Made by a program: the position numbers and the translations under genes. From Octopus sinensis (Eukaryota): a stretch of 64,000 nt of DNA. Shown here piece after piece: positions 867-62,216 of the stretch. The stretch is taken from assembly GCF_006345805.1 (NCBI RefSeq), contig NC_043001.1, forward strand, positions 29,388,001 to 29,452,000, in the 5' to 3' direction. The notes under the pieces are model-generated. The model saw only the letters and a list, made by a program, of their open reading frames with translations, was not told where the DNA came from and made no database searches. Each line of letters starts with the position of its first letter. Positions within the stretch are counted from its first letter, which is position 1.

Positions 867-907
<41 letters not shown>

Positions 908-3666: not shown

Positions 3667-3824
3667 AGTAATTGACATAACAAATGTATTTACTCCAGCT
3701 GTAGAGTCAAGAAGTCCAAAGTATATGCCATTATGGTAATATCGGTTAGCTACAAACTCAGGGTTGTGTTCATTGACATTAGTTACTCTTACTGTCACAG
3801 ATGAAGTTGGATATGTCTGGAATG
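3667..3824 (-). CDS. Cadherin exon 30 (158 nt, phase 1-0)
   Basis: ttgcag|CA...ACT|gtaagt; [52 protein letters not shown]. Confidence 0.88.
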
Positions 3825-6800
3825 CTGCAAGACAATGATTTGGCTATTACTGGTTATTCTTGAAGAATTTCTATTTTTTGTTAAATGTCCAAATATCTGA
3901 GTTTACAATTATTTCCCTTTTTGTCACTGATTAAAATGATATGTCTAATGACTAAAGTAAGCATTGTAATGATGTTTATAGCTAACGAAACAGTTGTTGA
4001 GCATAATTAAATTATGAACTATTTGTGAGGATACATTCTGATACCACTGCAGCCACTCATGTAAAATGTAAGGCAGCCAATGGAAATTGCAGCTGTGATA
4101 CCAGTGCCAGTGGCACGTAAGAGAACCATCCGAACGTGGCCGTTGCCAGCACTGGCCCGACTGGCCTCGTGCCGGTGGCACGTAAAAAGCACCATCCGTT
4201 CGTGGCCGTTGAAATTGGTTGAAATTGCCGAAATTGAAGAAAATATCTTACAAATATCTTATAAACTATAGAATTTTCTCAAGAAAGCCAAGAGAAAAAG
4301 ATGTTTTATAAACACATTCTACCAATATACGAAGTTTAAAACTTTTTAGTTACATGGAAATTATTTTAAAATCTGCCGTTCAAACCGAAAAAATCCGTCA
4401 TTTCTCCTGTCAATAAGCTGTCGGCTACCTTCATGCCTTGAATGACATGTGAAATAAGAGATTCCTTACTTGATAAAGCAGAAAGCCTGAACATATAACA
4501 CAAAGCATTATAACTATTACCTTAATGGTTTTGCCAATTATTTCTACAGAATAAGTAACAAATGTTATAAGAAATTGGTAACAAAATACAGTATGGTAAA
4601 AGACATACCTAACAGTCTCCGCGTAGTTGATTGGTAAACGATAATCTTTAGATCGTAGATAGACTTTCTAGCTTCATAGTCAATTCCTTTCAATAAACTG
4701 AGATCACATGAAGCTGAATTTGTGTTATATTTCACAGAGAAGAGCCCTGCAAAACAGTAAAGTAAATCATTGAGTAAAGTTAATTATTTAATAGAAGGAA
4801 ATGAAAAAAAAAAAAAAAGAAAAAATATAAAATTCAAAAGGCAATAAACATATTCCATTTATACTTTACTAATTAGTCAATGGAGAGTTTCTACAAAATT
4901 ACAGTTGTTAGAAACAGCAGCTCTCAAGTCACTTAAAAACACAAATTCCATCTTAAATATAAATACATTTAATTCTTTTTTGGAATAGTGAAAGTTGAAC
5001 CAGATGAAGCTATAAATATTAGCATGTAAATATGGGGTTAAAAATTTTTGGGGTTTTCTATTCAAAGGGATTTTAACCCAAGGTTTATATGCCATTATTT
5101 ATAGTTTCATCTACTTTGGGCTTCACCATTCCAAAAAAAAAAAAAAAAAATTTAGAATCCTGCTTCCTGTACTAAAGGCATGCTTGGTGAGAATTTAATA
5201 GGATCAAAGAGTAATATTTGGTATAAATAGAGGATGAATAATTGGTTAGATATCAACCACAAGAAGGGCAACAATGAATTACTGAAGGAAAGAGTGATTT
5301 TACCTCAACTTTGAAGAACTGATATTGAAATTCTTTCTCAGATCAATTAAGCAACAAGATATGTTCATCGCTTAAAAATGAAGTCATTTTAATGGCTACA
5401 TCTAACAAAATTATGTATTTTAGCTATTAGATTGAAATCAACAAGAATTTAGAAAAAAGCCTAGGTCTATTATAGAGAATTCTTTCTAAATACAATTGGG
5501 CATATACTATTAGTTGTTAGGTGCTGGTATGGCTGTATAGTTAAAGAAGTTCACTTTCCAAACACAAGGTTTCAGATTCAATCTCACTGTATGGTACCTT
5601 GGGAAAGTGTCTTCTACTATAGCCTGGAGCTGATCAAAGACTTCTGAATGGATTTGGGAGATGGAAATTGAAAGAAACCTGTTTTTTCTGAGATTTTGTC
5701 TTGGCATTAAGCAATAGTTGTAAGCTAGCATTGTTATCACTCAAGTAGTGTCCTTTACCTCAAATGTTCCACTAAAGCATGTCCGAGCATGGAGAAATGT
5801 TACCTTATATAGAAACAGGTGAGAATTGTGAAAGGAAGATCATTTAACCATAGAAAATCTGCCACAAAAAATTCCATCTAACCCATGAAAGCATGGAAAA
5901 GTAGACGCTAAACTGATAATGATAATGATGATGATGGTAATTCAATCTTCAGCAGTTAGAAGTTAATTGTATATAACAACTACCAGCTATTAGGCTTTTA
6001 CGAGAGAGTACCAGATAAATTAGGGGAGAATTCACAAAAAAACAAAAGATGAAGACAGGTGGTGTAGACAACAAACAGATGTACGTATTAGTTTAACACT
6101 CGGGAAGTGAAAAAGTTTTTAACGTTTCGAGCCTATGCTCTTACACAGAAAGGAACACAGAAAGAAACAAGGAAAGAATATAATGTGTAGTGTCTAGTGA
6201 TTCATCATGGCTAAATTAGTATTTTTTCTTTACCTTCATCTCCACTCTGTATTTGACAAATGATACTGTTTGCAGACATTGCATTTTCCACTTTCATGGT
6301 CAGGATGATCTCATTTTGTGCAGTGTTCTCAGGAATAGTTACACTAAAATAAAACAAACAGGAAATATTCATTAAATATACATTAAAGGCGGTGCTCCAG
6401 CATGGCCGCAGTCAAATGACTGAAACAAGTAAAAGAGTAAAGAGTATAAAGAAAGATGAGTGATATTCTGCTGAATTGCAGTAACTTAATAAATTAATAA
6501 CTGTAATTATCTTTTTAAAACAGTTCTCATTGTGTTAACTTTTGACTATTTCACTGCAGTGTTTTTGCATATTTTAAACATTTACAGGGTTTTGAGTTCA
6601 GTTCCAATGTGCAGCACCTTAAAGCATTGTCTTTTACTATAGCTTCAGATTTACCAACGATCTGTGAATGAATTTTGCTGATGTGTGTGTCTCTGATGGA
6701 AATTGTATGGAAACCCATCTTCTATGCATACTTGCATGCATGTGAGTGTGTATTCACACATACATCTTTGTGTTTTTTTCTCTTAGCACTTGACAACTGG

Positions 6801-9382
6801 TATTTGTTTACATCCACAAATCTCAGCAATAAGTGACCAACTAAATAAGTACCAGTCTTAATAGCAAGCACAGAGGTCAAAAATGATTGACTCAAAAATA
6901 TTAACTCAGCATGGTTGTAGCCATCTTAAATTTATATAAAAATAAAATAAATTTATGAACTATCTCGCCCTGTTGCCAGCCTCGCCCCATTGCCAGCCTC
7001 GCCCCGTTGCCAGCCTCGCCCCGTTGCAAGCCTTGCCCCATTGCCAGCCTTGCCCCATTGCCAGCCTTGCTCCGTTGCAAGCCTCCCCCCATTGCAAGCC
7101 TCCCCCCGTTGCAAGCCTCGCCCCGTTGCCAGCCTTGCCCCGTTGCCAGCCTCGCCTGGCACCTGTACCGGTGGCACGTAAAATGCACCCACTACACTCA
7201 CGGAGTGGTTGGCATTAGGCAGGGCATCCAGCTGTAGAAACACTGCCAGATCAGACTGGAGCCTGGTGCAGCCTTCTGGCTTCCCAGATCCCGGTCGAAC
7301 CATCCAACCCATGCTAGCATGGAGAATGGACGTTAAACGATGACGACGTGTCAATTATAATGGCTTATAAATTTATTTCATTAACATGAACTTATGACTA
7401 CAATGGTTTTGTTAATTTCTCATTGCTATAGGAGCTAACGCCTTGATTTTTTTTACAAGTTCCTACAGGGCTTCAGCCACTCCAGTTATGAAAACCTTAT
7501 GTTGTAAATAGCAAATCGTTTGCCTTATTGTACCATAAATGTTCTACTGCATCGAACTTTCATATTTCTTTTCCTCTCAGATTTAATGACCTTCAGTTCT
7601 CCTTTTTAGGATTTATCTAACTTCACTTACACAAATTCTTCTGCAAAAACTATGGCAAATTAAGGAATTCTTTAGTTCAATACGTCTTCAATTCTTTTAT
7701 AAGTTAGACATGTTTTCCTCGAAGCTGCATGGTTCAGTGGTTAGAGTGTCAGGCTCACAATCATGAAGTAGTGAGTTTGATTCCTGGACCAAGCCATGTG
7801 TTGTGTTCTTGAGCAAGATACTTTATTTCATGTTGCTCCAGCTCACTCATTTGTAAAACAAGTTGCGATGTCACTAATACCAAGCTGTATTGGCCTTTGC
7901 CCTTCCCTTGGATAACATCAGCAGCATGGAGAGAGAGGGGAGGCTGTTATGCATGAGTGACTGTTGGTCTTCCATAAACAACCTTGCCCTGACTTGTACC
8001 TCAGAGGAGAATTTTCTAGGTGCAAGCCCATGGTCAGTCTGATAAAGTGGAGAGTTACTCCTCACCGTTGTTCTGCTTTTATAATATTTTACCAGTAATA
8101 CACATGTCATAATGCAGTGTTAGAGTAGAATTATGTTTTACCTCAAGCTCACACATGTTAATAAGTGTAGGTCTCCAGTTATGTTGTGACTAATTTCTTA
8201 CCCCAAGAATAGATTTATGTAGAATATTTTGTGTCTTTATTGGAGTGAATCTCATCAAAAATCAAATTCAATGACTGGCGTCCGTGTTAGTGGGGTGCAA
8301 AGAGCACCATGCGAGTGTGATCATTGACAGAGCGGCTAACCAGCTTCCGTGCCAGTGGCACTTAAAAGGCACCATTCGAGTGTGATTGTTACTAGTGTCA
8401 CCTTACTGGCACTCGAGCTCTGTGCTAGTAGGGTATTAAGAATACCATCCAAGCATGATCGTTGCCAGAGCGGCTATCTGGCCTCCGTGCCGGTGGCATG
8501 TAAAAGACACCATTCGAGCATGATCGTTACCAGCATTGCCTTACGGGTACCTGTGCCGGTGGCACATGTAAAAGATTCGAGTGAGGTCGTTGCCAGTACC
8601 GCCTGACTGGCCCCGTAAAAGCACCCACTACACTCTCAGAGTGGCTGGCATTAGGAAGGGCATCCAGCTGTAGAAACTCTGCCAGATCAAGATTGAAGCC
8701 TGGTGCAGCCATCTGGTTTGCCAGTCCTCAATCAAATCGTCCAACCCATGCTAGCATGGAAAGCGGACGTTAAACGATGATGATGATGATGATGATGTTG
8801 TAAGTACTGTGATTTTATGGTAGAGCATAAGAATATTAACCAAGACTGATTAGTTCAATTCTACTACAAGAGTATGTATGGAAAAGTAAAACATCTCATA
8901 CTGAAATTGATAAAAACTGAAAAGACCCGTATAGATCAATGCTTTCTGATAATCCAATATTGTATTTAAAATTACAGTATTGATAATTACAGTATTGATA
9001 ATTACAGTAGAAAGTATTGTATAAAGTTCATAAAAATTACATATTCAAAGTTGAAAAGTGCTGACAACATAGACAACTTACAAATAGGTTGGCTGTACAA
9101 AACCCAGTTGCCGGTCAGGTAATATCGCTTGGGTGACATTTATGGAAATGCTTGCTTCTGCTGTTTTTGGATTCCAGCCGCTGTCTTTAGCAATTACCTT
9201 GAACTGAAAAGATCAGATGCATTTAAATAATTAAATAACTTGTTGAAGAAAGATGATAATTGAAATAACTTTTAACCTTTAAATATATTTAACTAGTTGA
9301 AATGACTTGATGAAGAAAGATAATAATTGACATCATTTTCTTCAATGTACATGCACATGGGACATACATACTAAACACATGG

Positions 9383-17400: not shown

Positions 17401-17450
17401 ATTTATTATCTGCAAAAATCAACATGGTCTCTTACAGTTATGCATATGTA

Positions 17451-17533
<83 letters not shown>

Positions 17534-17901
17534 CACACAAAGCTGATGTACATGAAGTACAAGCGTTGTTAGAAATAGCAGCCAGTAAGCTATTGGTGCT
17601 ATGTAGAGCTTCGCTAAATGTGTTTACAGACACTAGGGATGCTTAAAAAAGTCAGAAACCATGGTCCAGGAAATAGATGGTAAATGTTTTTATTTTTCAT
17701 TCCCTTCGAGTTTTTATCCCTAATAGTGGTTTGGACTTTAGCTGTTCCTTCTAGCGTGAAAAGAATTCTATGAAGGATACTTCTTATGTGTTTAAATGTA
17801 CACTGTATTTACATGAGTAATATATAGTCTATTGACTAATTTTTCTACAATCTAGGCCACAGGTAGCAAAAATTTCTAAAATCTTTATTACTCTGATATT
17901 A

Positions 17902-36510: not shown

Positions 36511-36515
36511 GTATG

Positions 36516-36547
<32 letters not shown>

Positions 36548-36561
36548 CACACACACACACA

Positions 36562-36644
<83 letters not shown>

Positions 36645-36688
36645 ATATATATATATACATATATATATATACACACACACATACATGC

Positions 36689-36729
<41 letters not shown>

Positions 36730-39700: not shown

Positions 39701-40227
39701 AAAACAAAATCCTGTAAATTATCTTTCAGTGGTAACTTACATTGAAAATACTTGGACTACTGGCTGTTAGAGCTTTAATCAAAAGGACATCACCATTGGA
39801 ATTCACTTTGAAGTAAGATTGTGCTTGAGAGTTAGGAAGACCAAATGAAAACACAATTGGATCCTATATGTAAGAATAAAAACAAGAACAGAGAAAATAA
39901 ATTGTTGTGAAATCTAAAAAGTACTTTCACTTTTACTGTCATCAAATCATTTAACAATATTTTATGTAGCAACAGGAAAGGGTTAGTAACAGGAAGGATA
40001 TATGACTAAAAAAACAATATGCTTTTTACTCTTTTTCTTGTTTCAGTCATTTGACTGTGGTCATGCTGGAGCACCACCTTTAGTCGAGCAAATTGACCCC
40101 AGGACTTATTCTTTGTAATCCTAGTACTTCTTCTATCAGTCTCTTTTGCTGAACCACTAAGTTGCGGGGATGTTAAACACACCAGCATTGGGGGGGCAAA
40201 CACAGACACAAACATATATGCACACAC

Positions 40228-48400: not shown

Positions 48401-49013
48401 GTTTGTTACACTGTATCTAAAACACCAAAATACTTACTACATATTGTGTATTATTTTGTGAATCCAACAACAGACTCCTTTTTAATTGAAGGATACAGCT
48501 CTTGGGTGCGAGAGTAAAATATTGCAAAGCAACCGTTTGTCCTATAATTTTACAACTGATAAAATTCTGGAATATAAAAATAATAAAGAGAAATTAAAAT
48601 TCATCATTTTGAACAAAAATTCAGGGCAGACATGGCAGTGTGGTTTAAAAGCTCCCTTTTCAACCATGAAGTTTTGGGTTCAGTCCTAATGTACATCTTC
48701 AGCAATTCTTTTCTACTCTAGGCACAAGGCCCGAAATTTTGGGGGAGGGGGCAAGTTGATTACATCGACCTCAGTACACAACTGGTACTTAATTTATCGA
48801 TCCCGAAACGATGAAAAGCAAAGTCGACCACAGCGGAATTTGAACTCAGAACATAAAGACAGACAAAATATCACTAAGCATTTCACCCGGCATGCTAACA
48901 TTTCTGCCAGCTCGTTGCCTTTGTACATCTTCAGCAATTATCTTCTGATATAGCCTCAGACTAATTAATGCCTTCTTATTGAATTTGGTAGATGGAAATT
49001 AAGTGGAAGCCTG

Positions 49014-52612: not shown

Positions 52613-55600
52613 TCATATATACTTAAAATATTCATAAGAATCAAAATGGCAGATGGTTGCTGTTTATTGTGTTCTTGGAGAAAAAGCATGACCTTACTTG
52701 ACTTCATATTTGACCAAAAATTTCTCAAACATTATAAAGAAAAATTTTATAAATAAAAATAATATGAATAAATAAATGAAATACATATAAACAAAACAAA
52801 AAAAGAAAGTATACAGAAAACTATAGAATTCCTCATTCTAGAGCTGGCTGTTAACTGCAAAATAAATCTGATAAAGAACTCACTGTGTAAGATGTTGTAC
52901 TCAAAATATCTGTTCGAAGATCTTTTTTCGTGGTTACAGATCCAGTGACATTGTTGACTTGAAAGAATAACTCAGCTGGATAATTTCCCACCACTCGGTA
53001 GCGTACCACATCCTGAAAGGAACGAAATCTGAATATAGTAACAGTCTACTTGTGCTACTCAATTTAGCACTAATTCACTATAGCCTCTTTTTACATGGAG
53101 ACATTTTCATTGGGATAACATTACGAGAGGGTGTTAAAAAGTTCCCAGCTTTGAGGGTAGCGTGAAAGGCCTGGTAGGAGGCTCAACCTTCTGAGTTTTT
53201 TCACAGGGCTTAGAGAAACTGAAGGCCACTGCAATAAGTGTGTGAATCTGAGAGGGGAATATGTTGAATAAAATCGTAATTAACTGATCTTCCTGTATTT
53301 TCTTTTACCCAAAGGCAGGAACTTTTCAGCACCCACCTTATATATTATAGAAATTGCATGCTAACATATAAAAAATTATGTACACTCACACATACATTCA
53401 AATTGTACGTTTTTTTTTTTTTATCTATCATCTGTAGAAATGGCCTGCAATTCCAAGTAGAGGATGGAAGTTCATCTCTGATGCTAAAAAAATTACCACA
53501 CTGAATATTTAAAAGTTGAATGGAGAACATCAATGATTAAAATCATGTCCAAAAAGAGCTTGAAGGCATTAACACAGAGTCACTAACTTTAGAAAGAATT
53601 CTTACTACTGAATTTCTCAGTAACAACATTAAGGTAACCAGAAATCACTGACAAGTTTACTGAGCATGTTCTTGACTGGAGTCACAGTAACAAGGTAAAA
53701 AGAAGTGTTTCATAACATATTCTACAGCTGTGAATTGTTTTATGAGAGATCACGAAATTCAATCTGCATAAGACTTAGACCTCAGTAAGCAACCAATGAA
53801 CAAGAAAGAGCTACAGCCTGAACATCTTCCGCCTTTTGCTTTTCTTTTCATTGGTGTGTTTCAACTGAATTAATGGCGAGAAGGGTCGTGTGCACATAAT
53901 TAAAGTTGATTCATTTAATTAGTTTCATATTTTCTTAACCCTTTCGTTACTGTATTTATTTTGAGATGCTCTGTGTTTCTTTCAATTACTTTAAATATAA
54001 CAAAGAATTTAGTAAAATAACTTAGTTATCATTCAGCTAGTGATAGGAATATAAATTGTGACTAAGGTTTGGTGGAAGATTTTAATTTAAAACTCATGGA
54101 AACAAGACATACTCATATCCAGAGCTGGTTTCAGCTGGGTTGGTAATGAAAGGGTTAATGAAATGACAGAATCTTTTTGCTTTCAAATTTTATCATAACT
54201 TTAGATCATAATGTGTAATATTACATTGCATGGGCTTATCTAAAGTTATATAGTGACTGGAGAGGGTGATAGTGACTCTCTAGATCTTGCAATCATTTGG
54301 CAGTGTTGCCCTCCTTCATTTGTTTTGAGGCACCATTAAAACTAGCATGTCAAGTTTGTATCTCTATTTATGCTGTGTTGTACAGTCTCAGTCAGTGCTG
54401 TATATATTAGGAGTACACCTAGAGCACAAACTAGGATATTGATTTATAACCACACATATTGGTGTTTGTGTGTTACTATAAAACATTTCATTTTTGGAGA
54501 TTGACTCGCATAGCAAGTGATTTGATCCGAGATCGTGTGCTGAAACGAAATCAATTGCAGCGTGGAAGGTGTTTGTAAGCCATTTAAGAAACACACAAAA
54601 GCCATTTGATTCACTTCAACATTTAAGTTTAATTTGTCAAAATATTTTCGTCGCTTTAAGACACGTGACCTGTTCGCTGACAAAAAATCCAGTGAACAGG
54701 TCGCAGTCTTAAAGCGATGAAAATATTTTGACAAATTAAACTTAAATGTTGAAGTGAATCAAACGGCTTTTGTGTGTTTCTTAAATGGCTTACAAACACC
54801 TTCCATGCTGCAATTGATTTCATTTTTGCTTGTTAATTAAATAACTAAAAGCTTAATAATTTGACATTGAGTTATGTATTAGTATTTCTTATCTACATGT
54901 TGAGCAGTGATAGACTTTACCTTCAACTTTTTCAGAGTGGAGTGATGTTATTATGTTAAACCAGAATATTAGTTTCGGGTGAATGAAGATTAGAATAATT
55001 CGCTTAACAATTCAGGTATTAATATTTTGAATAAAAGAAGTAAGATCTTCCACAATATATAGAAGTAAAAAGAAAATAGGAAAGAAAAAAGTGGAAGAAA
55101 GGTCAGTCTTTGGAAGTACAGAGTGATTGGTCATGATATCGGCAAAAAATATTAGCATCAATACTGCTTTGCTTAAGCAATGACATAAGAAATAACATTC
55201 ATACACATTTGCTCACACACACATATTCATGCACATATACACATACACATGCATATATATGACAAGCTTTTTACAGTTTTTTGCCTACCAAATTCACTCA
55301 TCAGTCAGATTGAAGCTATAGTAGAGTATATTTTTTGAAGGTCTGACATTGTGGGACCAAATCTGAAACTACATTGTTATAAGCGGACTTGTTAATCACA
55401 CAGATGTGTCTGTGCTTCTATTAACAGAATTTTGAATGACGTTCTCTGAACAATTCAGTAGACAGTGAAATTGGGTATATAAGTACACATTGATTAAAAA
55501 ATGGATTACAGATGAGAATTGAACAAAACTAGCCAACATTTCAGAATTTTCTCATTATTTTCCATTCCATGCAATGCAAAAATGAAAATAAAAATAAAAG

Positions 55601-56421
55601 GAAAATACAAAAAAAATAAACAGAACATTCAGGGTTAGAATATGAAATGACAAAAGTTATTGTTCGGTATACATGTTACATGGTATACACGTTATCATTT
55701 TTAACGAGAGAACACTTACAGTGTTTAACTGTGGCAGAGCTTGGACACCAACAATGACTGTCCCAACGGAACAGTCTCTTTCAAAGTAGCAAAATATTTA
55801 TTTTGCGAGAAAACAGGTGGTCGATTGTCGTTTGTTGTAGTCACTTTTACACTAACACTGGAGGTTTTACTTTGTGGATAACCATTATCACTGACTTTCA
55901 TAATACACTGCAAAAGAAAGAATTGATAGAAACAGGGTAAGAAGTGATTATTTATCACATTTCGGAATTACCATTTTTCAAAACAAGTTAGAACCTACCC
56001 TATCTGAATAATCCATACCATATAAGCTGAGCAGCAATTAACCTAAATAGGTTGGGACACACACACATACACTCGCACGTGCACACACACACTCGTGCGC
56101 ACACGCACACACAGATCCTCCTCCTCTTCCTCCTCCGCCACCGCCACCTCCTCATTTTTGCATTCACTTTTGTAGTTTATTAAGGCAGATTTTCTACAGC
56201 CAGATGCCCTTTTTGTCACCAACTCTCAGCTGTTTCCAAGCAAGGTATTTTCTCCATGGCCAGTCATGTTCTTAGAGTATTGGAAAGAAATGACACTGCT
56301 TCTATGGCCATGATACTCATTTACGTCTATCACTTGATGTGAATTCAAGGAAACACAGACGTGTATACACTCACACATACATACATACATACATACATAC
56401 ATACATACATACATACATACA

Positions 56422-59400: not shown

Positions 59401-62216
59401 TGTAGGTAAAATAATGTAGTTTTTAAATGAGTTCTACGAAATAAATCAAATAGACTTATAGGACAGTAAAACATGACAAATTAATCACATACACACACAT
59501 ACACCTACAAAACATATTTAAGGTTTAGATAGATCTTGATCTGAATCTGTACTTACATCAAATGTTCTATTTGTAGATGGTAACACTTCTCGTACAAATA
59601 TCTCTCCTGTACTTGGTTTTATGTAGAAATACTTCTGACAATCACTGGTTTGTATGATAGAATAAGTTAGCACATCCTGGAAGGTAAGAAAATTAAAATA
59701 TCAAGAAATGAAAGAGTAAAATATGCTTACCAAATGATTTACTCAAAATATAGTCTAAACAAGTAAAAGTTGAGAAACAAAATAATTTAGGTAAATAATG
59801 ACAATGGGTTCATGATTAATATGATAGTATGAATGTGTTTTAAGAAACCAGTCATGTACAATAAGGATAAAACATTATTGACACATGACTACATTAACTT
59901 CAGAAAACTTTTGGCTTATTCAGAGAGGGACAGACAGCATCCAAATCTCTGTACAGAGTCTTAAAGGCTGATGGGAGAAGGAGAAAAAAACTAACTTTTA
60001 GATTATCTTCAGATAGAAACCAGGTCTTCTACTAGGGGTACCTGAAGGCCAAGTAATGGTGTTAGACCTGGTAAGGGATAGTCTACCATACAAGAATAGG
60101 TGAAATCCAATTTCACTTACAAGACTTAGATCTCAATCCAGGGCTATGGTAGAACTACTACATAAAAATATCATCAACATCATTGTTTTAATATCCACTT
60201 TATCAAGACAAATTTTCTATGGTTGTGTAGTGTATCTTGCATGCATGGATTGGATTCGATCCACCACAAATTCAAATTAATACTGCAACAGAACTTTTCC
60301 CACGATGGAACAATGGTTTTTCTCTGACAGCAGTTTTACATTTTCCAGATGCCTTTAGCTAGGCCGAAATAATGTCTTCACTACTTGACCCTTTCTAACC
60401 TCTTCTACTTCACCAAAAGCTAGAATAGATAACAAGACCACCAACTAAATCTATTGTTCTCAATGATATATCTATCATTCTGGATAGTTATATAAACCAG
60501 CACATCCCAAGCAAAAATCAGTTTTAGTCGCCAGCCGGTGACGACAACTCAACCAAGTCAGTCACATCATGACGACCCAGTGAGGTCTGGCTGACCAACC
60601 TTGGTCAGAGGGAAAAATGAAGTTTACTGTCAGACAACACCCAACACTTCTCTCTAGCTCTAATTCTGTTCTCTTACAACATCATTCTATCTCTCTCAGC
60701 AATTAGTACTACTAAACAATGAAGAGGACACAAACACAAACATTCTACCGTATTTAACTTTTGCATGCTTTTGGATTTATCAACCTGCCCATCGAGGCTA
60801 GGTATTGTAACGTAATGGTAAATAAATACTTTCTTAAAACTTTATACACTTTGTTCTTTCACATCCTACAGTGTGCAATTATAACATTGTTTACCAATCA
60901 ATCTAAAATCGTTACAGTTGCATGTTTTTCCCCTAACTAACCTTTACCTGTTTCTAAGCAAGGTAATATTTTTACATGGCCCAACATGTTTTTGCAGAAT
61001 ATTAGAAAGGAATGACATTCATTTACAACAAACATGCAATATTAACACGGATGTACACTTATGCATACATGCATATATATGAGGAGACGCCTAAAATTTC
61101 CTGGCTTTGGATGAAAGAAAATACAGGAGGATCAGCTAATCCTGATTTTATTCAACAAATTCCCCTCTCAGATACACACACTCATTGAAATGGTCCTTCA
61201 GTTATTCTATGCCCTGTTGTTGTTGTTAAGCAACAAGACGGGTAAGGGTGATTAGGTGATGGTCTAGGACTTAGGGGCAGTAGACCCCAGACCTTTTGAG
61301 CGAAATGGGCTACTCGACCAGAAGAAAATTCTAACTGGGCCCCACTTGCAAGGTCATGCACTGTTTATCTTGATATGAGATCACCATGTCGCACACATAT
61401 GGTTGTGATGCATGTGCCTGGTGTACACTTATCAGACGGGTAGTCCTGATGGGTATACTGGGCTCCATATATTTTACTCCAGTGTCACTTTGATGGCATG
61501 CACTGCTCTCTCACTCAATAATAATAATAATAATAATAATAAAAATAACAACAACAACAATAATGAAATTATTATGTATAGTGCTCAGATGCACTCTTAT
61601 TTCTGGCAAAGTGGTTGATTCAGTAATTTATTTTCATACCACAGTGAAAACAATGAACTAAAACCCACATCATACAACCTATTGCATAGAAATAAAATGG
61701 ATTTGGAACTAAATCTCTTATTTAATGCACTAGCTGATAACCATTATACAGACCTTTAAACTAAGGAGCTTGTTTTGTTTTATATAAGCGGAAATTATGG
61801 AAAATTAGAAAAATAAAAATGACTTGCCACAACAAAACTTTCGTTAACTACCTCTCTCGTAATCACACATACATTCATGCATGCATGCATACTCCATCTC
61901 TCTCTCTCTTTCTGTCACACACACACATACAGACATGCACACATACATACACATACACACACATATGCACTATCTCTCTCTCTCTCTCTCTCTTAACCCT
62001 CCTCTCTATACATTAGAAAATGAAATTACTTACATTGTCATTATCAACTGCTTGAATCTTTCCAACTATTGTTCCTAGTTTTGAAAGAGAATTGGTCTGG
62101 AATCTATAAGATGGTAACTGAAAGCTTGGAGAATTAACATTCCTACTCATCTTGATGTAGATCTTTGTGGTGTCTTTGTTTGAAGGATATTGTGGATTAT
62201 AAGCTTCAACAATCAA
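3667..62216 (-). CDS. Partial multi-exon gene for an atypical large cadherin-repeat protein (30 exons, about 14 EC repeats; start and stop outside the window)
   Basis: 30 GT-AG bounded exons found by manual reverse-complement translation join into one cadherin-repeat frame (PxF, YxI, FxIxxxxG, AxDxG, DxD motifs), apart from one 1-nt deficit in the exon at 55720-55907. Exon lengths sum to 4580 nt. Confidence 0.93.
4609..4746 (-). CDS. Cadherin exon 29 (138 nt, phase 1-1)
   Basis: ttgcag|GG...TTA G|gtatgt; [45 protein letters not shown](A). Confidence 0.87.
6030..6210 (-). mobile_element. Short retroelement fragment with a hammerhead-like motif (possibly Penelope-like derived)
   Basis: Minus strand 6117-6152 reads CTTT-CTGTGTA-A-GAGC-ATAG-GCTC-GAAAC-GTT-AAAA. 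Confidence 0.45.
6234..6343 (-). CDS. Cadherin exon 28 (110 nt, phase 2-1)
   Basis: ttttag|T GTA...GAA G|gtaaag; [36 protein letters not shown](G); phase matches exon 27. Confidence 0.87.
6965..7347 (+). mobile_element. GAT-tailed SINE-like retroposon (family B), 5' part replaced by a 17-bp minisatellite
   Basis: 3' end ccaacccatgctagcatgg...gacgttaaacgatga shared with many copies; unit ttgccagcctcgccccg about 11 times at 6973-7156. Confidence 0.85.
7725..8055 (+). mobile_element. tRNA-derived SINE (family D)
   Basis: Head catggttcagtggttagag...gagtttgattcc (A/B-box-like), body matches 21330 and 50452. Confidence 0.8.
8270..8797 (+). mobile_element. GAT-tailed SINE-like retroposon (family B), long copy
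   Basis: Internal ccggtggcacgtaaaa-type repeats, family 3' end and (gat)n tail. Confidence 0.85.
9082..9203 (-). CDS. Cadherin exon 27 (122 nt, phase 0-2)
   Basis: tttcag|TTC...TAT TT|gtaagt; [40 protein letters not shown](F). Confidence 0.87.
10010..10400 (-). mobile_element. 3' fragment of an RLE-type non-LTR retrotransposon (R4/Dong-like)
   Basis: Open frame [56 protein letters not shown]...[19 protein letters not shown]; flanked by (ATT)n. Confidence 0.75.
10445..10688 (-). mobile_element. 3' fragment of a second R4/Dong-like family
   Basis: [43 protein letters not shown]; bounded on both sides by (ATT)n. Confidence 0.7.
10750..11292 (+). mobile_element. About 540-bp non-coding element associated with (TAA)n tracts
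   Basis: Same sequence reversed at 34700-35185 and partial at 9695-9790 and 61290-61520, each adjoining (TAA/ATT)n. Confidence 0.75.
11297..11423. repeat. Compound (ATT)n-(AGT)n microsatellite
   Basis: Seen directly. Confidence 0.95.
11946..12077 (-). CDS. Cadherin exon 26 (type B, 132 nt)
   Basis: tttcag|AAT...AAT|gtaagt; [44 protein letters not shown]. Confidence 0.88.
12440..12783 (+). mobile_element. GAT-tailed SINE-like retroposon (family B)
   Basis: Family 3' end and (gat)n tail. Confidence 0.85.
13309..13694 (+). mobile_element. Full-length tRNA-derived SINE (family A)
   Basis: Head ggagtggctgtgtggtaag...ggttccgcgttcagtccc, CORE-like ccttgggcaagtgtc, tail gtaaaagagtaaagag; ends about 25 nt from the exon 25 donor. 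Confidence 0.85.
13720..13911 (-). CDS. Cadherin exon 25 (type A, 192 nt)
   Basis: ttccag|TTA...AAT|gtaagt; [64 protein letters not shown]. Confidence 0.88.
14297..14413 (-). CDS. Cadherin exon 24 (type B, 117 nt)
   Basis: ctacag|GCA...AAC|gtaagt; [39 protein letters not shown]. Confidence 0.88.
16342..16559 (+). mobile_element. piggyBac-like MITE (family 1)
   Basis: TTAA|CCCTTTCGTTAC...GTAATGAAAGGG; right TTAA degenerate. Confidence 0.75.
16722..16952 (+). mobile_element. GAT-tailed SINE-like retroposon (family B), 5'-truncated
   Basis: Family 3' end and tail; about 60 nt from the exon 23 donor. Confidence 0.82.
17012..17206 (-). CDS. Cadherin exon 23 (type A, 195 nt)
   Basis: ttctag|TTC...TCG|gtaaat; [65 protein letters not shown]. 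Confidence 0.9.
18339..18741 (+). mobile_element. Full-length tRNA-derived SINE (family A)
   Basis: Near-identical to 13309-13694. Confidence 0.87.
18826..18939 (-). CDS. Cadherin exon 22 (type B, 114 nt)
   Basis: tttaag|GAT...GAG|gtaagt; [38 protein letters not shown]. Confidence 0.88.
19070..19381 (+). mobile_element. GAT-tailed SINE-like retroposon (family B)
   Basis: Family 3' end and (gat)n tail. Confidence 0.85.
19782..20001 (+). mobile_element. piggyBac-like MITE (family 1), 220 bp
   Basis: TTAA|CCCTTTCATTA...TAACGAAAGGG|TTAA. Confidence 0.82.
20556..20738 (-). CDS. Cadherin exon 21 (type A, 183 nt)
   Basis: tgacag|CTT...GGG|gtaagc; [61 protein letters not shown]. Confidence 0.92.
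21109..21252 (-). CDS. Cadherin exon 20 (type B, 144 nt)
   Basis: cttcag|GGT...ATA|gtaagt; [48 protein letters not shown]. Confidence 0.92.
21330..21655 (+). mobile_element. tRNA-derived SINE (family D)
   Basis: Matches 7725 and 50452. Confidence 0.8.
22013..22231 (+). mobile_element. piggyBac-like MITE (family 2) inserted in a reverse-oriented family B SINE (about 21860-22440)
   Basis: TTAA|CTCTTTAGTG...TACTAAAGGG|TTAA. Confidence 0.72.
23440..23790 (+). mobile_element. tRNA-derived SINE (family A), 5'-degenerate
   Basis: Matches 18339-18741. Confidence 0.82.
24092..24274 (-). CDS. Cadherin exon 19 (type A, 183 nt)
   Basis: aaacag|ATT...ACT|gtaagc; [61 protein letters not shown]. Confidence 0.9.
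25021..26304 (-). mobile_element. Full-length (1284 bp) decayed mariner element
   Basis: TA flanks; TIRs TCAGGCTGAGTAAAAAGTAAGC and TCAAGTTGAGTAAAAAGTAATC; broken transposase with [17 protein letters not shown] and KWVPHDL...[11 protein letters not shown]. Confidence 0.85.
26323..26433 (-). CDS. Cadherin exon 18 (type B, 111 nt)
   Basis: ttacag|GGA...CAA|gtaagt; [37 protein letters not shown]. Confidence 0.88.
27125..27355 (-). mobile_element. tRNA-derived SINE (family C)
   Basis: Reverse of gagctggcagaaacgttag...gagttcaaattccgcc...gtcgatgtaattgac; same family as 43025 and 47415. Confidence 0.85.
27620..27880 (+). mobile_element. GAT-tailed SINE-like retroposon (family B)
   Basis: Family 3' end; about 60 nt from the exon 17 donor. 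Confidence 0.82.
27944..28129 (-). CDS. Cadherin exon 17 (type A, 186 nt)
   Basis: ttttag|ATC...GCG|gtgagt; [62 protein letters not shown]. Confidence 0.9.
28356..28864 (+). mobile_element. piggyBac-like MITE (family 2) with a nested minus-strand CR1/L2-type LINE 3' fragment (about 28560-28830)
   Basis: CCCTTTAGCATT...CACCAAAGGG|TTAA; nested [34 protein letters not shown]. Confidence 0.75.
29193..29324 (-). CDS. Cadherin exon 16 (type B, 132 nt)
   Basis: ctctag|GGT...ACG|gtaatt; [44 protein letters not shown]. Confidence 0.9.
29403..29667 (-). mobile_element. Internally rearranged tRNA-derived SINE with about 42-bp flanking direct repeats
   Basis: Head ggaggcacgtggcttagtggttaggg; flanks catactcatgcattata...caccctcatca at 29361-29402 and 29668-29709. 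Confidence 0.7.
30038..30220 (-). CDS. Cadherin exon 15 (type A, 183 nt)
   Basis: catcag|CTT...ACA|gtaagt; [61 protein letters not shown]. Confidence 0.92.
30385..30640 (+). mobile_element. Short retroelement with a hammerhead-like motif and a 3x about 20-bp internal repeat (possibly Penelope-like derived)
   Basis: gtgatctcttgagcacca three times at 30390-30448; GTTT-CCGACGA-A-GAGC-TCC-GCTC-AAAAC-GTT-AAAC at 30505-30539. Confidence 0.5.
31021..31146 (-). CDS. Cadherin exon 14 (type B, 126 nt)
   Basis: ctctag|GAT...ACA|gtaagt; [42 protein letters not shown]. Confidence 0.9.
32390..32716 (+). mobile_element. GAT-tailed SINE-like retroposon (family B); a more decayed copy follows at about 32820-33010
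   Basis: Family 3' end and tail. Confidence 0.82.
33198..33358. repeat. Perfect 63-bp inverted repeat with a 35-nt spacer
   Basis: 33198-33260 is the exact reverse complement of 33296-33358. Confidence 0.92.
33502..33690 (-). CDS. Cadherin exon 13 (type A, 189 nt)
   Basis: tttcag|CTT...ACG|gtaact; [63 protein letters not shown]. Confidence 0.9.
34225..34455 (+). mobile_element. RT fragment of an R4/Dong-like non-LTR element
   Basis: [21 protein letters not shown]...[18 protein letters not shown]. Confidence 0.65.
34700..35185 (-). mobile_element. (TAA)n-associated non-coding element, reverse copy of 10750-11292
   Basis: Flanked on both sides by (AAT)n. Confidence 0.8.
35362..35490 (-). 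CDS. Cadherin exon 12 (type B, 129 nt)
   Basis: ttacag|GGC...GTG|gtaagt; [43 protein letters not shown]. Confidence 0.9.
35625..36260 (-). mobile_element. Decayed mariner transposase relic
   Basis: C-terminus [48 protein letters not shown]. Confidence 0.7.
36470..36938. repeat. Long compound (TA)n/(CA)n microsatellite
   Basis: Seen directly. Confidence 0.95.
36939..37290. mobile_element. Mariner-derived MITE
   Basis: Degenerate TIRs agaggattgtctgaaaagttcattggctgac and gtcagcctgtgaacttttcagttcacccttg. Confidence 0.65.
37677..37859 (-). CDS. Cadherin exon 11 (type A, 183 nt)
   Basis: tgccag|TTT...CTA|gtaaga; [61 protein letters not shown]. Confidence 0.9.
38222..39543 (-). mobile_element. 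About 1.3-kb decayed Tc1/mariner-superfamily element
   Basis: TA flanks; degenerate TIRs (ggtgcagagaggacggac and gtccatcctctctgctccaccctg); transposase C-terminus [28 protein letters not shown]...ENGHH. Confidence 0.78.
39741..39863 (-). CDS. Cadherin exon 10 (type B, 123 nt)
   Basis: atatag|GAT...AAT|gtaagt; [41 protein letters not shown]. Confidence 0.88.
40023..40465 (-). mobile_element. tRNA-derived SINE (family A) with an expanded internal TA tract
   Basis: Reverse complement of 18339-18741. Confidence 0.82.
41112..41332 (+). mobile_element. piggyBac-like MITE (family 1), 221 bp
   Basis: TTAA|CCCTTTCGTTAC...GTAACAAAAGGG|TTAA; about 35 nt from the exon 9 donor. Confidence 0.85.
41372..41554 (-). 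CDS. Cadherin exon 9 (type A, 183 nt)
   Basis: tttcag|ATT...AAC|gtaagc; [61 protein letters not shown]. Confidence 0.9.
42462..42895. mobile_element. hAT-like MITE
   Basis: Termini CAGGGATTCTCAACCT and AGGTTAAGAACCACTA resemble hAT/Charlie TIRs; 8-bp TSD only partly preserved. Confidence 0.55.
43025..43265 (+). mobile_element. Full-length tRNA-derived SINE (family C)
   Basis: gcgagctggcagaaatgttag...gagttcaaattctgcc...aataaagaaataag. Confidence 0.85.
43930..44372 (+). mobile_element. RTE-clade LINE 3' fragment
   Basis: [13 protein letters not shown]...[19 protein letters not shown]...WKWIG...GYRKKGRPK. Confidence 0.85.
44567..44698 (-). CDS. Cadherin exon 8 (type B, 132 nt)
   Basis: tttcag|GGT...AGA|gtaagt; [44 protein letters not shown]. 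Confidence 0.9.
44915..45065. repeat. 57-bp fold-back (1 mismatch) with a 37-nt loop
   Basis: 44915-44971 versus the reverse complement of 45009-45065. Confidence 0.92.
45070..45450 (-). mobile_element. Helitron/DINE-like non-autonomous element (5' part)
   Basis: Minus strand starts ...tatataaaatccattcttgtctgtctgtgtgtg...ccgattgcactcaaatttg; no CTAG 3' end recognised. Confidence 0.5.
46185..46563. mobile_element. Two family B SINE copies fused head-to-head (tails outward)
   Basis: (cat)n plus reversed 3' end on the left; forward 3' end plus (gat)n on the right. Confidence 0.85.
46908..47090 (-). CDS. Cadherin exon 7 (type A, 183 nt)
   Basis: tcttag|ATC...GTG|gtaagt; [61 protein letters not shown]. 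Confidence 0.9.
47415..47645 (-). mobile_element. Full-length tRNA-derived SINE (family C)
   Basis: Reverse complement of the 43025 type. Confidence 0.85.
47650..47900 (-). mobile_element. Decayed RLE-domain fragment of an R4/Dong-like element
   Basis: [12 protein letters not shown]...(fs)[29 protein letters not shown]. Confidence 0.55.
48438..48566 (-). CDS. Cadherin exon 6 (type B, 129 nt)
   Basis: ttccag|AAT...GTA|gtaagt; [43 protein letters not shown]. Confidence 0.85.
49790..49965 (+). mobile_element. CR1/L2-type LINE 3' fragment
   Basis: [34 protein letters not shown]. Confidence 0.7.
50097..50279 (-). CDS. Cadherin exon 5 (type A, 183 nt)
   Basis: ttttag|TTA...AAT|gtaagt; [61 protein letters not shown]. 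Confidence 0.9.
50452..50785 (+). mobile_element. Full-length tRNA-derived SINE (family D)
   Basis: Head gaaggcgcatggctcagtggtta...gagtttgaatcc. Confidence 0.85.
51055..51442 (-). mobile_element. Young full-length tRNA-derived SINE with a 12-bp TSD, nested in a piggyBac-like MITE
   Basis: Head GTGGAGGCGCAATGGCCCAGTGG...GTTTCAATTCC; TSD tttcagaataat at 51043-51054 and 51443-51454. Confidence 0.88.
52189..52579 (+). mobile_element. Non-autonomous Helitron (391 bp)
   Basis: A|TC 5' end (tctatatatatataaagctg), subterminal cccaagcaacgccgg, CTAG|T 3' end; no TSD. Confidence 0.78.
52884..53012 (-). CDS. Cadherin exon 4 (type B, 129 nt)
   Basis: tttcag|GAT...ACA|gtgagt; [43 protein letters not shown]. 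Confidence 0.9.
53123..53341. mobile_element. Mariner-derived MITE (partial reverse copy at about 61080-61215)
   Basis: TIRs acgagagggtgttaaaaagttcccagcttt and aaaggcaggaacttttcagcacccacctt. Confidence 0.65.
53939..54154 (-). mobile_element. piggyBac-like MITE (family 1), reverse orientation
   Basis: TTAA|CCCTTTCGTTAC...GTAATGAAAGGG|TTAA. Confidence 0.85.
54547..54821. repeat. Long hairpin element (about 133-bp arms, 10-nt loop), MITE-like
   Basis: 54547-54679 is the near-perfect reverse complement of 54690-54821. Confidence 0.9.
55720..55907 (-). CDS. Cadherin exon 3 (type A, 188 nt, 1-nt frameshift near 55767)
   Basis: ttgcag|TGT...ACT|gtaagt; [47 protein letters not shown], then in the shifted frame [16 protein letters not shown]. 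Confidence 0.85.
57240..59205 (+). mobile_element. 5'-truncated, decayed RTE-clade LINE
   Basis: RT motifs [60 protein letters not shown], with stops and frameshifts. Confidence 0.9.
57419..57681 (+). repeat. 24-bp minisatellite, 11 copies, inside the LINE RT region
   Basis: Unit gtgtagtgcctgtatagtgccact; one copy lacks 1 nt. Confidence 0.93.
59557..59676 (-). CDS. Cadherin exon 2 (type B, 120 nt)
   Basis: ttccag|GAT...GAT|gtaagt; [40 protein letters not shown]. Confidence 0.9.
61290..61520 (-). mobile_element. Partial copy of the (TAA)n-associated element
   Basis: Matches 34960-35185; followed by (AAT)n. Confidence 0.75.
62034..62216 (-). CDS. Cadherin exon 1 of 30 in window (type A, 183 nt, phase 0-0)
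   Basis: ttttag|TTG...AAT|gtaagt; [61 protein letters not shown]. Confidence 0.9.

What the first reader, a model, noticed from the sequence alone, without database searches (positions are those of the whole stretch)
3667..62216. Alternating calcium-retaining and calcium-free cadherin linkers, co-varying across separate exons
In classical cadherin structures, Ca2+ site 3 is ligated by the linker Asn, the DxD motif and the AxDxG Asp of the following repeat. Here each repeat takes its DxD from the end of one A exon and its AxD from the start of the next A exon, two introns away, yet they track each other. Both present: E1/E3 (DNDN, SDNG), E5/E7 (DAD, SDNG), E9/E11 (DDD, ADNS), E13/E15, E15/E17, E19/E21, E21/E23, E23/E25, E25/E27. 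Both absent: E3/E5 (ALPQL, EAYIP), E7/E9 (SNNN, SAFN), E11/E13 (TNSN, KAYL), E17/E19 (one Asp only in NDPT; KAFR), E28/E29. The first seven repeats alternate strictly. Inference: a two-repeat (four-exon) higher-order unit giving alternating stiff and hinge junctions, so a zig-zag or foldable ectodomain rather than a rigid rod.
Basis: partly seen in the sequence, partly recalled or inferred. Interest (0 to 1): 0.75.

Follow-up and report, generated by a model that had tools for sequence, protein, structure and literature searches.

The report
Giant mollusc cadherin with alternating joints
This is part of a giant mollusc cell-adhesion (cadherin) gene whose repeats are joined by two alternating kinds of degenerate calcium site; the pattern is real and ancient, but each kind of joint is already known from other cadherins.

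Summary
The motif pattern is real. The window's minus strand carries 30 exons (3667-62216), giving 1,527 codons and 14 cadherin repeats. DXD and the top Asp (XDX-top) are both present in 9 repeats and both absent in 5, and EC1-EC7 alternate. Two corrections apply. First, exon E3 ('ALPQL') can only be read across a 1-nt frameshift. Second, no junction inside the stretch is canonical: DRE and the linker aspartates are missing almost everywhere, and an 'xRNxN' linker replaces DxNDN. The 'calcium-retaining' junctions can therefore hold at most one Ca2+, at site 3, like the flexible PCDH15 EC5-6 linker. They are unlikely to be stiff three-calcium joints. Co-variation across exons is expected, because both motifs sit on one domain face and bind the same ion; other cadherins show it too (odds ratio 10). 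The two-repeat unit is supported. Collinear orthologues from gastropods, a chiton, a bivalve, a brachiopod and a nemertean alternate RN and non-RN linkers, and non-aromatic and aromatic 'tops', at the same positions. Profile comparison clusters EC2/4/6/9 apart from EC1/5. The orthologues mostly keep the top Asp, so the perfect co-loss is specific to the window's lineage. The zig-zag shape remains untested. I rate this a new variant of a known kind, of moderate interest.

The parts
62034..62216 (-). E1, A exon: end of EC0 (top 'AYN'), linker 'SRNVN', start of EC1 (DXD 'DND')
59557..59676 (-). E2, B exon: middle of EC1 (no DRE)
55720..55907 (-). E3, A exon: EC1 top 'SDN', linker 'TTNDN', EC2 XEX 'KET', DXD position 'PQL'. 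188 nt, with a 1-nt frameshift near 55757-55760.
52884..53012 (-). E4, B exon: middle of EC2
50097..50279 (-). E5, A exon: EC2 top 'AYI', linker 'TRNAN', EC3 DXD 'DAD'
48438..48566 (-). E6, B exon: middle of EC3 (two conserved Cys)
46908..47090 (-). E7, A exon: EC3 top 'SDN', linker 'KQNPA', EC4 DXD position 'NNN'
44567..44698 (-). E8, B exon: middle of EC4
41372..41554 (-). E9, A exon: EC4 top 'AFN', linker 'SRNST', EC5 DXD 'DDD'
39741..39863 (-). E10, B exon: middle of EC5
37677..37859 (-). E11, A exon: EC5 top 'ADN', linker 'FRNVQ', EC6 DXD position 'NSN'
35362..35490 (-). E12, B exon: middle of EC6
33502..33690 (-). E13, A exon: EC6 top 'AYL', linker 'IKNIN', EC7 DXD 'DSD'
31021..31146 (-). 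E14, B exon: middle of EC7
30038..30220 (-). E15, A exon: EC7 top 'EDQ', linker 'LRNNN', EC8 DXD 'DSD'
29193..29324 (-). E16, B exon: middle of EC8
27944..28129 (-). E17, A exon: EC8 top 'SDS', linker 'LHSNK', EC9 half motif 'DPT'
26323..26433 (-). E18, B exon: middle of EC9
24092..24274 (-). E19, A exon: EC9 top 'AFR' (Arg conserved in mollusc orthologues), linker 'IRRNT', EC10 DXD 'DPD'
21109..21252 (-). E20, B exon: middle of EC10
20556..20738 (-). E21, A exon: EC10 top 'EDN', linker 'VSRSN', EC11 DXD 'DRD'
18826..18939 (-). E22, B exon: middle of EC11
17012..17206 (-). E23, A exon: EC11 top 'SDG', linker 'KHNLY', EC12 DXD 'DQD'
14297..14413 (-). E24, B exon: middle of EC12
13720..13911 (-). 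E25, A exon: EC12 top 'TDQ', linker 'ERNSY', EC13 DXD 'DQD'
11946..12077 (-). E26, B exon: middle of EC13
9082..9203 (-). E27: EC13 top 'KDS' and a long non-canonical linker ('[12 protein letters not shown]'). The exon pattern changes here; the following intron is phase 2.
6234..6343 (-). E28: start of EC14 (XEX 'PEN', DXD position 'NAM')
4609..4746 (-). E29: middle of EC14. It carries 'DYE', the only DRE-type motif in the stretch.
3667..3824 (-). E30: end of EC14 (top position 'VYQ'), near-canonical linker 'NVNEH' (DVNDN in orthologues), start of EC15. The gene continues beyond this exon.

Best explanation
The window holds EC repeats about 23 to 37 of a giant single-pass cadherin. Its family was seen here only in Lophotrochozoa. 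Pipelines label members 'protocadherin Fat 4-like', but the family lacks Fat's EGF and LamG modules.

Throughout this stretch the ligands of Ca2+ sites 1 and 2 are gone. These are DRE and the two linker aspartates. The linker is one residue shorter than canonical and reads x-R-N-x-x-x-P-x-F.

Two junction classes remain.
- Class I has an RN linker with Asn102, usually an acidic XEX-base residue in the preceding repeat, and DXD plus the top Asp in the following repeat. It keeps a complete set of site-3 ligands. I infer that it binds one Ca2+, like PCDH15 EC5-6. I also infer, with less certainty, that the conserved Arg stands in for the lost cation charge by pairing with Glu11 and the second DXD Asp.
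- Class II has a non-RN linker followed by a 'Y-type' repeat with an aromatic residue before the top position. In this lineage it has lost DXD and the top Asp as well, so I infer it is Ca2+-free.

Class I and class II alternate through EC0-EC7 and further upstream, because the protein was built from, or is constrained as, a two-repeat unit. That unit predates the split of molluscs, brachiopods and nemerteans. From EC7 onward class I predominates.

The DXD/top-Asp co-variation follows from both residues belonging to one ion site. Their position in different exons plays no part.

Shown: the gene model, the motif states, the family signature, conservation of the periodicity and the clustering of repeat types. 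Inferred: calcium stoichiometry, the role of the Arg and any mechanical consequence.
For: - Gene model and 14 cadherin domains.
- Motif states.
- DRE is absent, and the RN linker is a family signature. Position 101 is R in 80% of 358 family repeats. Only 66 of the 1,298 repeats scored in the other proteins of the first homologue search have an RN linker, nearly all of them in this family. Only 12 of the 147 proteins returned by the representative search have at least 30% RN linkers, and every named one is a mollusc, brachiopod or nemertean.
- Collinear orthologues.
- Per-junction table: RN linkers follow EC0, 2, 4, 6, 7, 9, 10, 11 and 12 in nearly all species. These are exactly the nine junctions whose next repeat keeps DXD and the top Asp in the window.
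- A Y-type repeat is associated with an RN linker at its own C-terminal end (odds ratio 6.6, p=4e-11).
- Repeat types cluster in profile-profile comparison (p=0.0014; p=0.029 with motif columns masked).
- Solved precedents. PCDH15 EC5-6 lacks DRE, has the linker PPNNQ, keeps DXD and XDX, binds one Ca2+ at site 3 and shows variable orientation (PMC7547225). PCDH15 EC9-10 lacks all motifs and is Ca2+-free and bent (PMC5120219).
- Orthologues have only cadherin Pfam domains, a transmembrane helix and a short tail.
Against: - No calcium binding or geometry was measured or modelled. The AlphaFold2 model of orthologue P0019 had pTM 0.31 and no pLDDT difference between junction classes.
- The RN linker is one residue shorter than canonical, so site-3 geometry may not be preserved. 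The Arg aligns with D100 or with x101 depending on gap placement.
- Window junctions 1/2 ('TTNDN') and 5/6 ('FRNVQ') keep Asn102 although the next repeat lacks DXD and the top Asp. Linker and top therefore do not track perfectly.
- The alternation inside the window alone is not significant (p=0.09).
- Single-sequence repeat identities show no clustering.
- E3 carries a frameshift, so this copy may not be translated as modelled.
Confidence: 0.6

Rival explanations
1. One reading: canonical, stiff, fully calcium-loaded junctions alternate with calcium-free hinges, giving a zig-zag or foldable rod.
For: DXD and the top Asp are present or absent together and alternate in EC1-EC7. Ca2+-free linkers are known bending sites (PMC5120219; PMC8325961).
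Against: None of the 'retaining' junctions has DRE or the linker aspartates D100 and D103. The solved analogue with this motif set binds one Ca2+ and is flexible.
Confidence: 0.1
2. All junctions in this stretch are effectively calcium-free. The conserved Arg and other contacts lock or shape the joints. DXD and the top Asp are kept for fold or electrostatic reasons, for example pairing with the Arg, and not for Ca2+.
For: R is present at 80% of family linkers in both junction classes. The linker is one residue shorter than canonical. EC9 replaces the top Asp by a conserved Arg while keeping the first DXD Asp in all mollusc orthologues, which suggests Asp-Arg pairing in place of an ion.
Against: The full site-3 ligand set (Asn102, DXD, top Asp) is conserved together at nine junctions across phyla. 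That is the pattern seen where a site-3 Ca2+ is bound in PCDH15 EC5-6.
Confidence: 0.2
3. This is a decaying gene copy: a pseudogene in which relaxed selection erodes the calcium motifs, so that the pattern has no function.
For: There is a 1-nt frameshift in E3. Several losses are single D-to-N changes specific to this lineage, namely EC0, EC4 and EC6.
Against: 29 of 30 exons are open with consensus splice sites. The same lost states (PRL/YIP, NNN/FNI, NPN) occur in an intact-frame relative that is 77-93% identical per exon. The losses fall only on the conserved Y-type repeats, not at random. The missing base lies in a short G or A run, which is typical of an assembly error.
Confidence: 0.07
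4. Chance: with only 14 repeats, the concordance and the alternation are coincidental.
For: The alternation in the window alone has p=0.09-0.13 (and my own count).
Against: Concordance has p=0.0005 (Fisher), or 0.011 given family rates. The same positions are marked in orthologues from other phyla, and the repeat types cluster.
Confidence: 0.03

Closest known systems
Protocadherin-15 EC5-6 'partial Ca2+-free' linker (PMC7547225)
   Same: The XEX is modified, DRE is absent, the linker has lost its aspartates but keeps an Asn (PPNNQ), and DXD and XDX-top are kept. One Ca2+ is bound at site 3 and the interdomain orientation varies. This is the same motif set as the nine class I junctions here.
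   Different: In PCDH15 it is a single junction among mostly canonical ones. Here it is the commonest state in a stretch with no canonical junction before EC14/15. It carries a conserved Arg, has a linker one residue shorter, and alternates periodically with a second class.
Ca2+-free linkers: PCDH15 EC9-10 and Drosophila N-cadherin EC2-3 (PMC5120219; Jin et al. 2012, known here only through citations)
   Same: All five calcium-binding motifs are absent or degenerate, as at window junctions 1/2, 3/4, 5/6, 8/9 and 13/14. These linkers are known to be bent or bendable.
   Different: The known examples have no common sequence motif and occur singly. Here the following repeat carries a conserved aromatic residue before the former top Asp, and the junctions recur every second repeat.
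Fat4 / Dachsous giant cadherins
   Same: They have a very long chain of EC repeats, a single transmembrane pass and automated 'Fat 4-like' names. They are also the best-scoring non-lophotrochozoan relatives. Fat and Dachsous are reported to self-bend (Tsukasaki 2014, cited).
   Different: Fat has juxtamembrane EGF and LamG domains and mostly three-calcium linkers (PMC9935876). The orthologues here have only cadherin domains and 0-4 'ND'-type linkers per protein.
LI-cadherin (CDH17), a 7-repeat cadherin thought to derive from duplication of a two-repeat unit with a Ca2+-free EC2-3 linker (from memory, not checked here)
   Same: It combines a two-repeat building block with a non-calcium junction between units.
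   Different: It has one duplication and canonical junctions elsewhere. It does not have a run of ten or so units with degenerate sites at every junction.

Membership tests
Cadherin superfamily | Tandem extracellular cadherin (EC) domains | tested here: met
   Pfam PF00028 matched 14 stretches (E=5.6e-130). The best solved relatives are CELSR1, CDH23 and protocadherins.
Canonical three-Ca2+ cadherin linker | XEX-base and D(R/Y)E in repeat n, DXNDN in the linker, DXD and XDX-top in repeat n+1 (PMC5120219, PMC7547225) | tested here: not met
   No junction from EC0/1 to EC13/14 has DRE together with the linker aspartates. Only EC14/15 comes close (PEN, DYE, NVNEH), and its DXD lies outside the window.
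Partial Ca2+-free linker, site 3 only (PCDH15 EC5-6 type) | DRE and linker Asp lost; linker Asn, DXD and XDX-top kept | tested here: met
   Nine junctions meet this by sequence: 0/1, 2/3, 4/5, 6/7, 7/8, 9/10, 10/11, 11/12 and 12/13. In the window, 9/10 and 10/11 have the Asn displaced by one position.
Partial Ca2+-free linker, site 3 only (PCDH15 EC5-6 type) | One Ca2+ actually bound at site 3; variable interdomain angle | not testable with these tools
   No ion-aware model or coordinates were available. AlphaFold2 gave pTM 0.31.
Ca2+-free linker (Jin 2012 class) | Absence of the calcium-ligating residues on both sides of the junction | tested here: met
   Junctions 3/4, 8/9 and 13/14 lack essentially all ligands. 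Junctions 1/2 and 5/6 lack DXD, the top Asp and DRE but keep a linker Asn.
Fat / Fat4 family | EGF and laminin-G domains between the EC repeats and the membrane (PMC9935876) | tested here: not met
   Orthologues P0121, P0126 and P0002 run through a transmembrane helix and have only cadherin-type Pfam hits. The window itself ends before this region.
Lophotrochozoan 'RN-linker' giant cadherin (a grouping defined here) | Most linkers read x-[RK]-N-x with no acidic residue at 103; DRE absent; collinear with P0121, P0126 and P0002 | tested here: met
   The window has 7 of 13 scored linkers of RN type, against 0-2 per protein outside the family. Collinear alignments score about twice as high as shifted registers.
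Octopus cadherin with more than 70 EC domains, highly expressed in suckers (Albertin 2015, quoted in PMC6062618) | More than 70 EC repeats in one gene | tested here: inconclusive
   The close relative has 2,803 aa ending inside the window's stretch, and orthologues are 2,900-4,000 aa (about 30-37 EC). This points to a different, shorter gene. Neither end of the gene is in the window, and the source paper was not held.

The most novel reading that the evidence does not exclude
The RN junction may be a distinct, undescribed kind of cadherin joint. In it a conserved Arg, in a linker one residue shorter than canonical, would replace the Ca2+ charge of sites 1 and 2 by pairing with Glu11 and the second DXD Asp, while site 3 alone binds calcium. 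Paired with a calcium-free 'Y-type' junction in a two-repeat unit conserved across Lophotrochozoa, it would make the ectodomain a periodic hard/soft chain with built-in, weakly calcium-dependent elasticity. A more remote add-on: several lost Asp residues are now Asn (AAY codons). If the source is a coleoid cephalopod, A-to-I editing could in principle recode them back to Asp. I give that a few per cent at most.
Probability: 0.25. Interest if true: 0.65.

Novelty: new variant of a known kind. Interest (0 to 1): 0.45.

Why it matters
Calcium-free and partially calcium-free linkers are thought to set the bending and elasticity of long cadherins such as tip links, Fat/Dachsous and DN-cadherin. In known cases they are isolated exceptions among canonical joints. 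Here canonical joints are absent from a stretch of 14 junctions, and two degenerate joint types recur with period two. That arrangement has been conserved since before molluscs, brachiopods and nemerteans diverged. It offers a natural test of how much rigidity one site-3 calcium, or an Arg substitute, gives a cadherin joint. It also provides a marker (RN linker, no DRE, no EGF/LamG) showing that the 'Fat 4-like' label on these proteins is not a true Fat assignment. The window on its own adds a lineage-specific end state in which the Y-type repeats have lost the whole site.

Tried and rejected
- Pairwise identity of the 14 repeats from the window alone showed no clustering: same type 22.8%, different type 23.0%, p=0.53, and lag 2 not above lag 1. 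Repeats that are only 16-33% identical give too little power. Per-repeat orthologue profiles did show clustering.
- The first homologue search returned nothing above 34% identity. The close relative P0131 appeared only in the representative search.
- The look-up of encoding contigs had no record for P0131. I therefore have no orthologous DNA, no dN/dS estimate and no check of exon structure in the relative.
- The AlphaFold2 model of P0019 with a 10-sequence alignment had pLDDT 78.9 and pTM 0.31. Linker-block pLDDT does not differ between junction classes, so it says nothing about bending. I did not run fold search on it.
- Jin 2012, Tsukasaki 2014 and Albertin 2015 are not held. What I say of them comes from papers that cite them.
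- A literature search for alternating or duplicated Ca2+-free linker units found nothing. That is not proof of novelty.
- Identity with the octopus cadherin of more than 70 EC repeats was considered and left open.
- The source organism was not verified. Named relatives are molluscs. The only close relatives are unnamed UniParc entries (UPI0006955DBA, UPI0006956867). From memory, their accession range fits a 2015 cephalopod proteome, but this is a lead only.
- ARAGORN found no tRNA genes.
- Two ORFs that look mariner-like to me had no Pfam hit.

Full report
**What is in the window**

The cadherin-like open segments all lie on the minus strand. I chose acceptor and donor sites by consensus and by frame, which gave 30 exons between 62216 and 3667. 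From E1 to E27 the gene alternates two exon types.
- 'A' exons are mostly 183 nt. Each carries the F-G end of one EC repeat, the inter-repeat linker, and the A-B strands of the next repeat up to its DXD.
- 'B' exons are 111-144 nt and carry the C-E strands.

All introns from E1 to E27 are phase 0. The exon pattern changes from E27 to E30. The spliced product is 1,527 residues without a stop and has 14 Pfam Cadherin stretches (E=5.6e-130). A profile built from the repeats finds these 30 segments and nothing else on either strand. The exon borders coincide with the segment borders of the closest relative found.

E3 is 188 nt long. The frame that reads 'KETVPLG' runs into a stop. The donor site and the text '[13 protein letters not shown]' are in another frame. 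The relative reads 'ETVPVGTFVVGVRALPRLNT' straight through. The window therefore lacks one base in a short G/A run near 55757-55760. I cannot tell whether it is an assembly error or a real lesion.

**Check of the observation**

I cut the protein at the P-x-F that follows each linker and aligned the 14 repeats (profile alignment). The DXD / X-D-X(top) states are:

| Repeat | DXD / top |
|---|---|
| EC1 | DND / SDN |
| EC2 | PQL / YIP |
| EC3 | DAD / SDN |
| EC4 | NNN / FNI |
| EC5 | DDD / ADN |
| EC6 | NSN / YLR |
| EC7 | DSD / EDQ |
| EC8 | DSD / SDS |
| EC9 | DPT / FRK |
| EC10 | DPD / EDN |
| EC11 | DRD / SDG |
| EC12 | DQD / TDQ |
| EC13 | DQD / KDS |
| EC14 | NAM / YQS |

Nine repeats have both motifs and five have neither (Fisher p=0.0005). 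EC1-EC7 alternate strictly. Inside the window alone, however, the alternation is not significant: permutation p=0.09, and by my own count the chance that five 'absent' repeats among 14 are never adjacent is 252/2002.

**Is the co-variation surprising?**

[quoted passage not shown] DXD and the top Asp belong to the same face of one domain and to the same ion, at site 3. Selection acts on the folded site, so their position in two exons is irrelevant.

In 1,556 repeats from 120 other cadherins the two motifs are strongly associated (odds ratio 9.9, p=3e-43). In this protein's own family the odds ratio is 52. The association is not perfect elsewhere: when DXD is lost, the top Asp survives in 54-58% of repeats. 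Against those rates the window's 14 of 14 has p of about 0.011. It is therefore a real feature of this lineage, though a modest one.

**What the 'retaining' junctions really are**

The rest of the calcium site is missing almost everywhere.
- DRE is absent from every repeat before EC14. A single Asp survives in EC2-EC4.
- The linker reads SRNVN, TRNAN, SRNST, FRNVQ, IKNIN, LRNNN, ERNSY and so on, in place of DxNDN.
- An alignment to CELSR1 pairs 'vt.rnangpif' with 'vldvndndpmf'. This shows the linker is one residue shorter than canonical.
- Depending on where the gap is placed, the conserved Arg stands at D100 or at x101.

Glu11 (sometimes), Asn102, DXD and the top Asp remain, so only the ligands of site 3 form a complete set. 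This is the motif pattern of PCDH15 EC5-6: XEX modified, DRE absent, linker PPNNQ, DXD and XDX kept. Crystal structures of EC5-6 show one Ca2+ at site 3 and widely different interdomain orientations (PMC7547225). The five junctions that also lack DXD and the top Asp match the fully Ca2+-free class, PCDH15 EC9-10 and DN-cadherin EC2-3 (PMC5120219; PMC8325961). The only near-canonical junction is EC14/15 (PEN, DYE, NVNEH; DVNDN in orthologues).

**Relatives**

The first search gave nothing above 34% identity. The best hits were molluscan 'protocadherin Fat 4' predictions. Three of them align collinearly with the draft at about twice the score of any shifted register:
- Plakobranchus P0002
- Liolophura P0004
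- Elysia P0019

An exhaustive search with P0019 added more. P0131 is an unnamed UniParc protein whose last 440 residues match window exons E3-E11 at 77-93% identity. It carries the same lost states (PRL/YIP, NNN/FNI, NPN) and has about 2,300 residues upstream. The search also added collinear orthologues from Patella, Potamilus, Lingula (a brachiopod) and Tubulanus (a nemertean), and paralogues from Haliotis.

The orthologues have only cadherin Pfam domains, a furin-like RKKRQ in EC14, two canonical membrane-proximal junctions, one transmembrane helix and a short tail. Fat proteins have EGF and LamG modules (PMC9935876), so the 'Fat 4' label is a similarity name and not a family assignment.

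The RN linker marks the family. R occupies the position in 80% of 358 family repeats. RN linkers number 0-2 per protein elsewhere. Only 12 of the 147 proteins returned by the representative search have at least 30% RN linkers, and every named one is lophotrochozoan.

**The two-repeat unit**

A 13-sequence alignment, read at the window's motif positions, shows three things.
- The linker after EC0, 2, 4 and 6, and after EC7, 9, 10, 11 and 12, is xRNxx in nearly every species. These are exactly the nine junctions whose following repeat keeps DXD and the top Asp in the window.
- The linker after EC1, 3, 5, 8 and 13 is something else. After EC3 it is a conserved xRDxx.
- The repeat that follows each of those other linkers (EC2, 4, 6, 9, 14) has an aromatic residue before the top position in most species.

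Across the family, an aromatic top is associated with an RN linker at the same repeat's C-terminal end (odds ratio 6.6, p=4e-11). In the long orthologues the Y/non-Y and RN/non-RN pattern runs for about 20 repeats upstream of the window's stretch. Examples are Patella '[13 protein letters not shown].....' (p=0.008) and the Lingula RN pattern (p=0.006).

Single-sequence identities among the window's repeats show no odd/even clustering. Profiles built per repeat from the orthologues do show clustering. EC2-EC4, EC2-EC6 and EC4-EC6 are the three highest scores in the matrix, EC9 joins them, and EC1-EC5 is next. In EC1-EC7, lag 2 and lag 4 score about 151-154, against 118-126 for lags 1, 3 and 5. 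The permutation p is 0.0014, or 0.029 after removing the DXD, top and linker columns. The two-repeat unit is therefore real and old. It arose either by duplication of a pair of repeats or through a shared structural constraint.

**What is not conserved**

Orthologues mostly keep the top Asp in the Y-type repeats ('AYD'). They keep both motifs in EC4. They lack DXD in EC2 (all but the bivalve) and variably in EC6. EC9 has 'DPx' plus '[YF]R' in all molluscs. The perfect co-loss, and hence the clean present/absent alternation, is the end state reached in the window's lineage and its close relative. Several of the losses are Asp-to-Asn changes.

**Mechanism I commit to**

The ectodomain stretch is a chain of degenerate junctions. 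One-calcium (site 3) joints carrying a conserved Arg alternate with calcium-free joints in the N-terminal part. Mostly one-calcium joints follow from EC7 to EC13, and canonical joints appear near the membrane. I rate this sequence-based assignment at about 0.6.

I think it plausible that the Arg compensates for the missing cation charge. The supporting points are its conservation, the shorter linker, the retention of Glu11 at RN junctions and the Asp/Arg swap in EC9. This is unproven. The mechanical outcome (zig-zag, spring or compact fold) could not be tested. The AlphaFold2 model of an orthologue gave well-folded domains but pTM 0.31 and no linker-class signal.

**Verdict**

The kinds of joint are known, but their periodic arrangement and the RN-linker family appear undescribed in the literature I could search. 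I rate it a new variant of a known kind, with interest 0.45.

Noticed in passing
window 55757-55760 (minus strand, exon E3): There is a one-base deletion relative to the intact reading of the closest relative (GGG-ACA where an extra G or A is needed). As assembled, the exon is out of frame. It may be an assembly error in a short homopolymer or a real lesion.
   Followed up: partly
window 3667-62216, introns of E1-E27: All 26 introns are phase 0, and eight A exons are exactly 183 nt. Skipping a B+A exon pair would therefore remove one repeat-length unit in frame. The relative's gene model (P0131) lacks the B exons E2 and E10, and its exon preceding E3 is only about 40% like window E1.
   Followed up: partly
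window 4609-4746 and 3667-3824 (E29/E30 junction): Orthologues carry a furin-like RKKRQ/RRKRQ insert in the F-G region of EC14. The window reads only 'TTRRLLA' across the splice junction. Either the site is lost or a small exon or alternative donor was missed.
   Followed up: no
window 59557-59676, 55720-55907 (EC1) and 48438-48566 (EC3): EC1 has a pair of cysteines ('SDCQ', 'FDCIM') and EC3 has another pair ('ISCK', 'KSCIL'). Both pairs are conserved in mollusc, brachiopod and nemertean orthologues, so they probably form intradomain disulfides.
   Followed up: no
window 57838-58485 (+ strand), in the intron between E2 and E3: These are reverse-transcriptase fragments of a retroelement. 58216-58485 matches Pfam RVT_1 at 33.6 bits and 57838-58059 matches weakly. 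An adjacent open frame of low-complexity sequence lies on the minus strand at 58212-58772.
   Followed up: partly
window 25553-25813 and 63064-63318 (minus strand); 43951-44370 (+ strand): These ORF remnants look to me like mariner/Tc1 transposase pieces ('PYSPDITPSDFHLF') and a LINE tail. Pfam gave no hit at E<=0.01.
   Followed up: partly
window about 6375-6485, 13606-13700, 18643-18740, 23699-23790 (minus-strand reading): The same short element, translating as '...[18 protein letters not shown][VI]EQ...', recurs in at least four introns. It is probably a SINE-like repeat.
   Followed up: no
window 1-1100, 17187-17650, 33330-33480, 36400-37000: There are long TA/CA-type microsatellite tracts that read as runs of YIYI/CVCV in every frame. 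Downstream of E30 (1-3600) no further exon was found.
   Followed up: no
P0175 (UniParc UPI0006956867, 1,915 aa): This is a second unnamed protein whose accession is close to that of the window's nearest relative. It has 17 of 19 RN linkers and is probably a paralogue of this gene in the same proteome.
   Followed up: no
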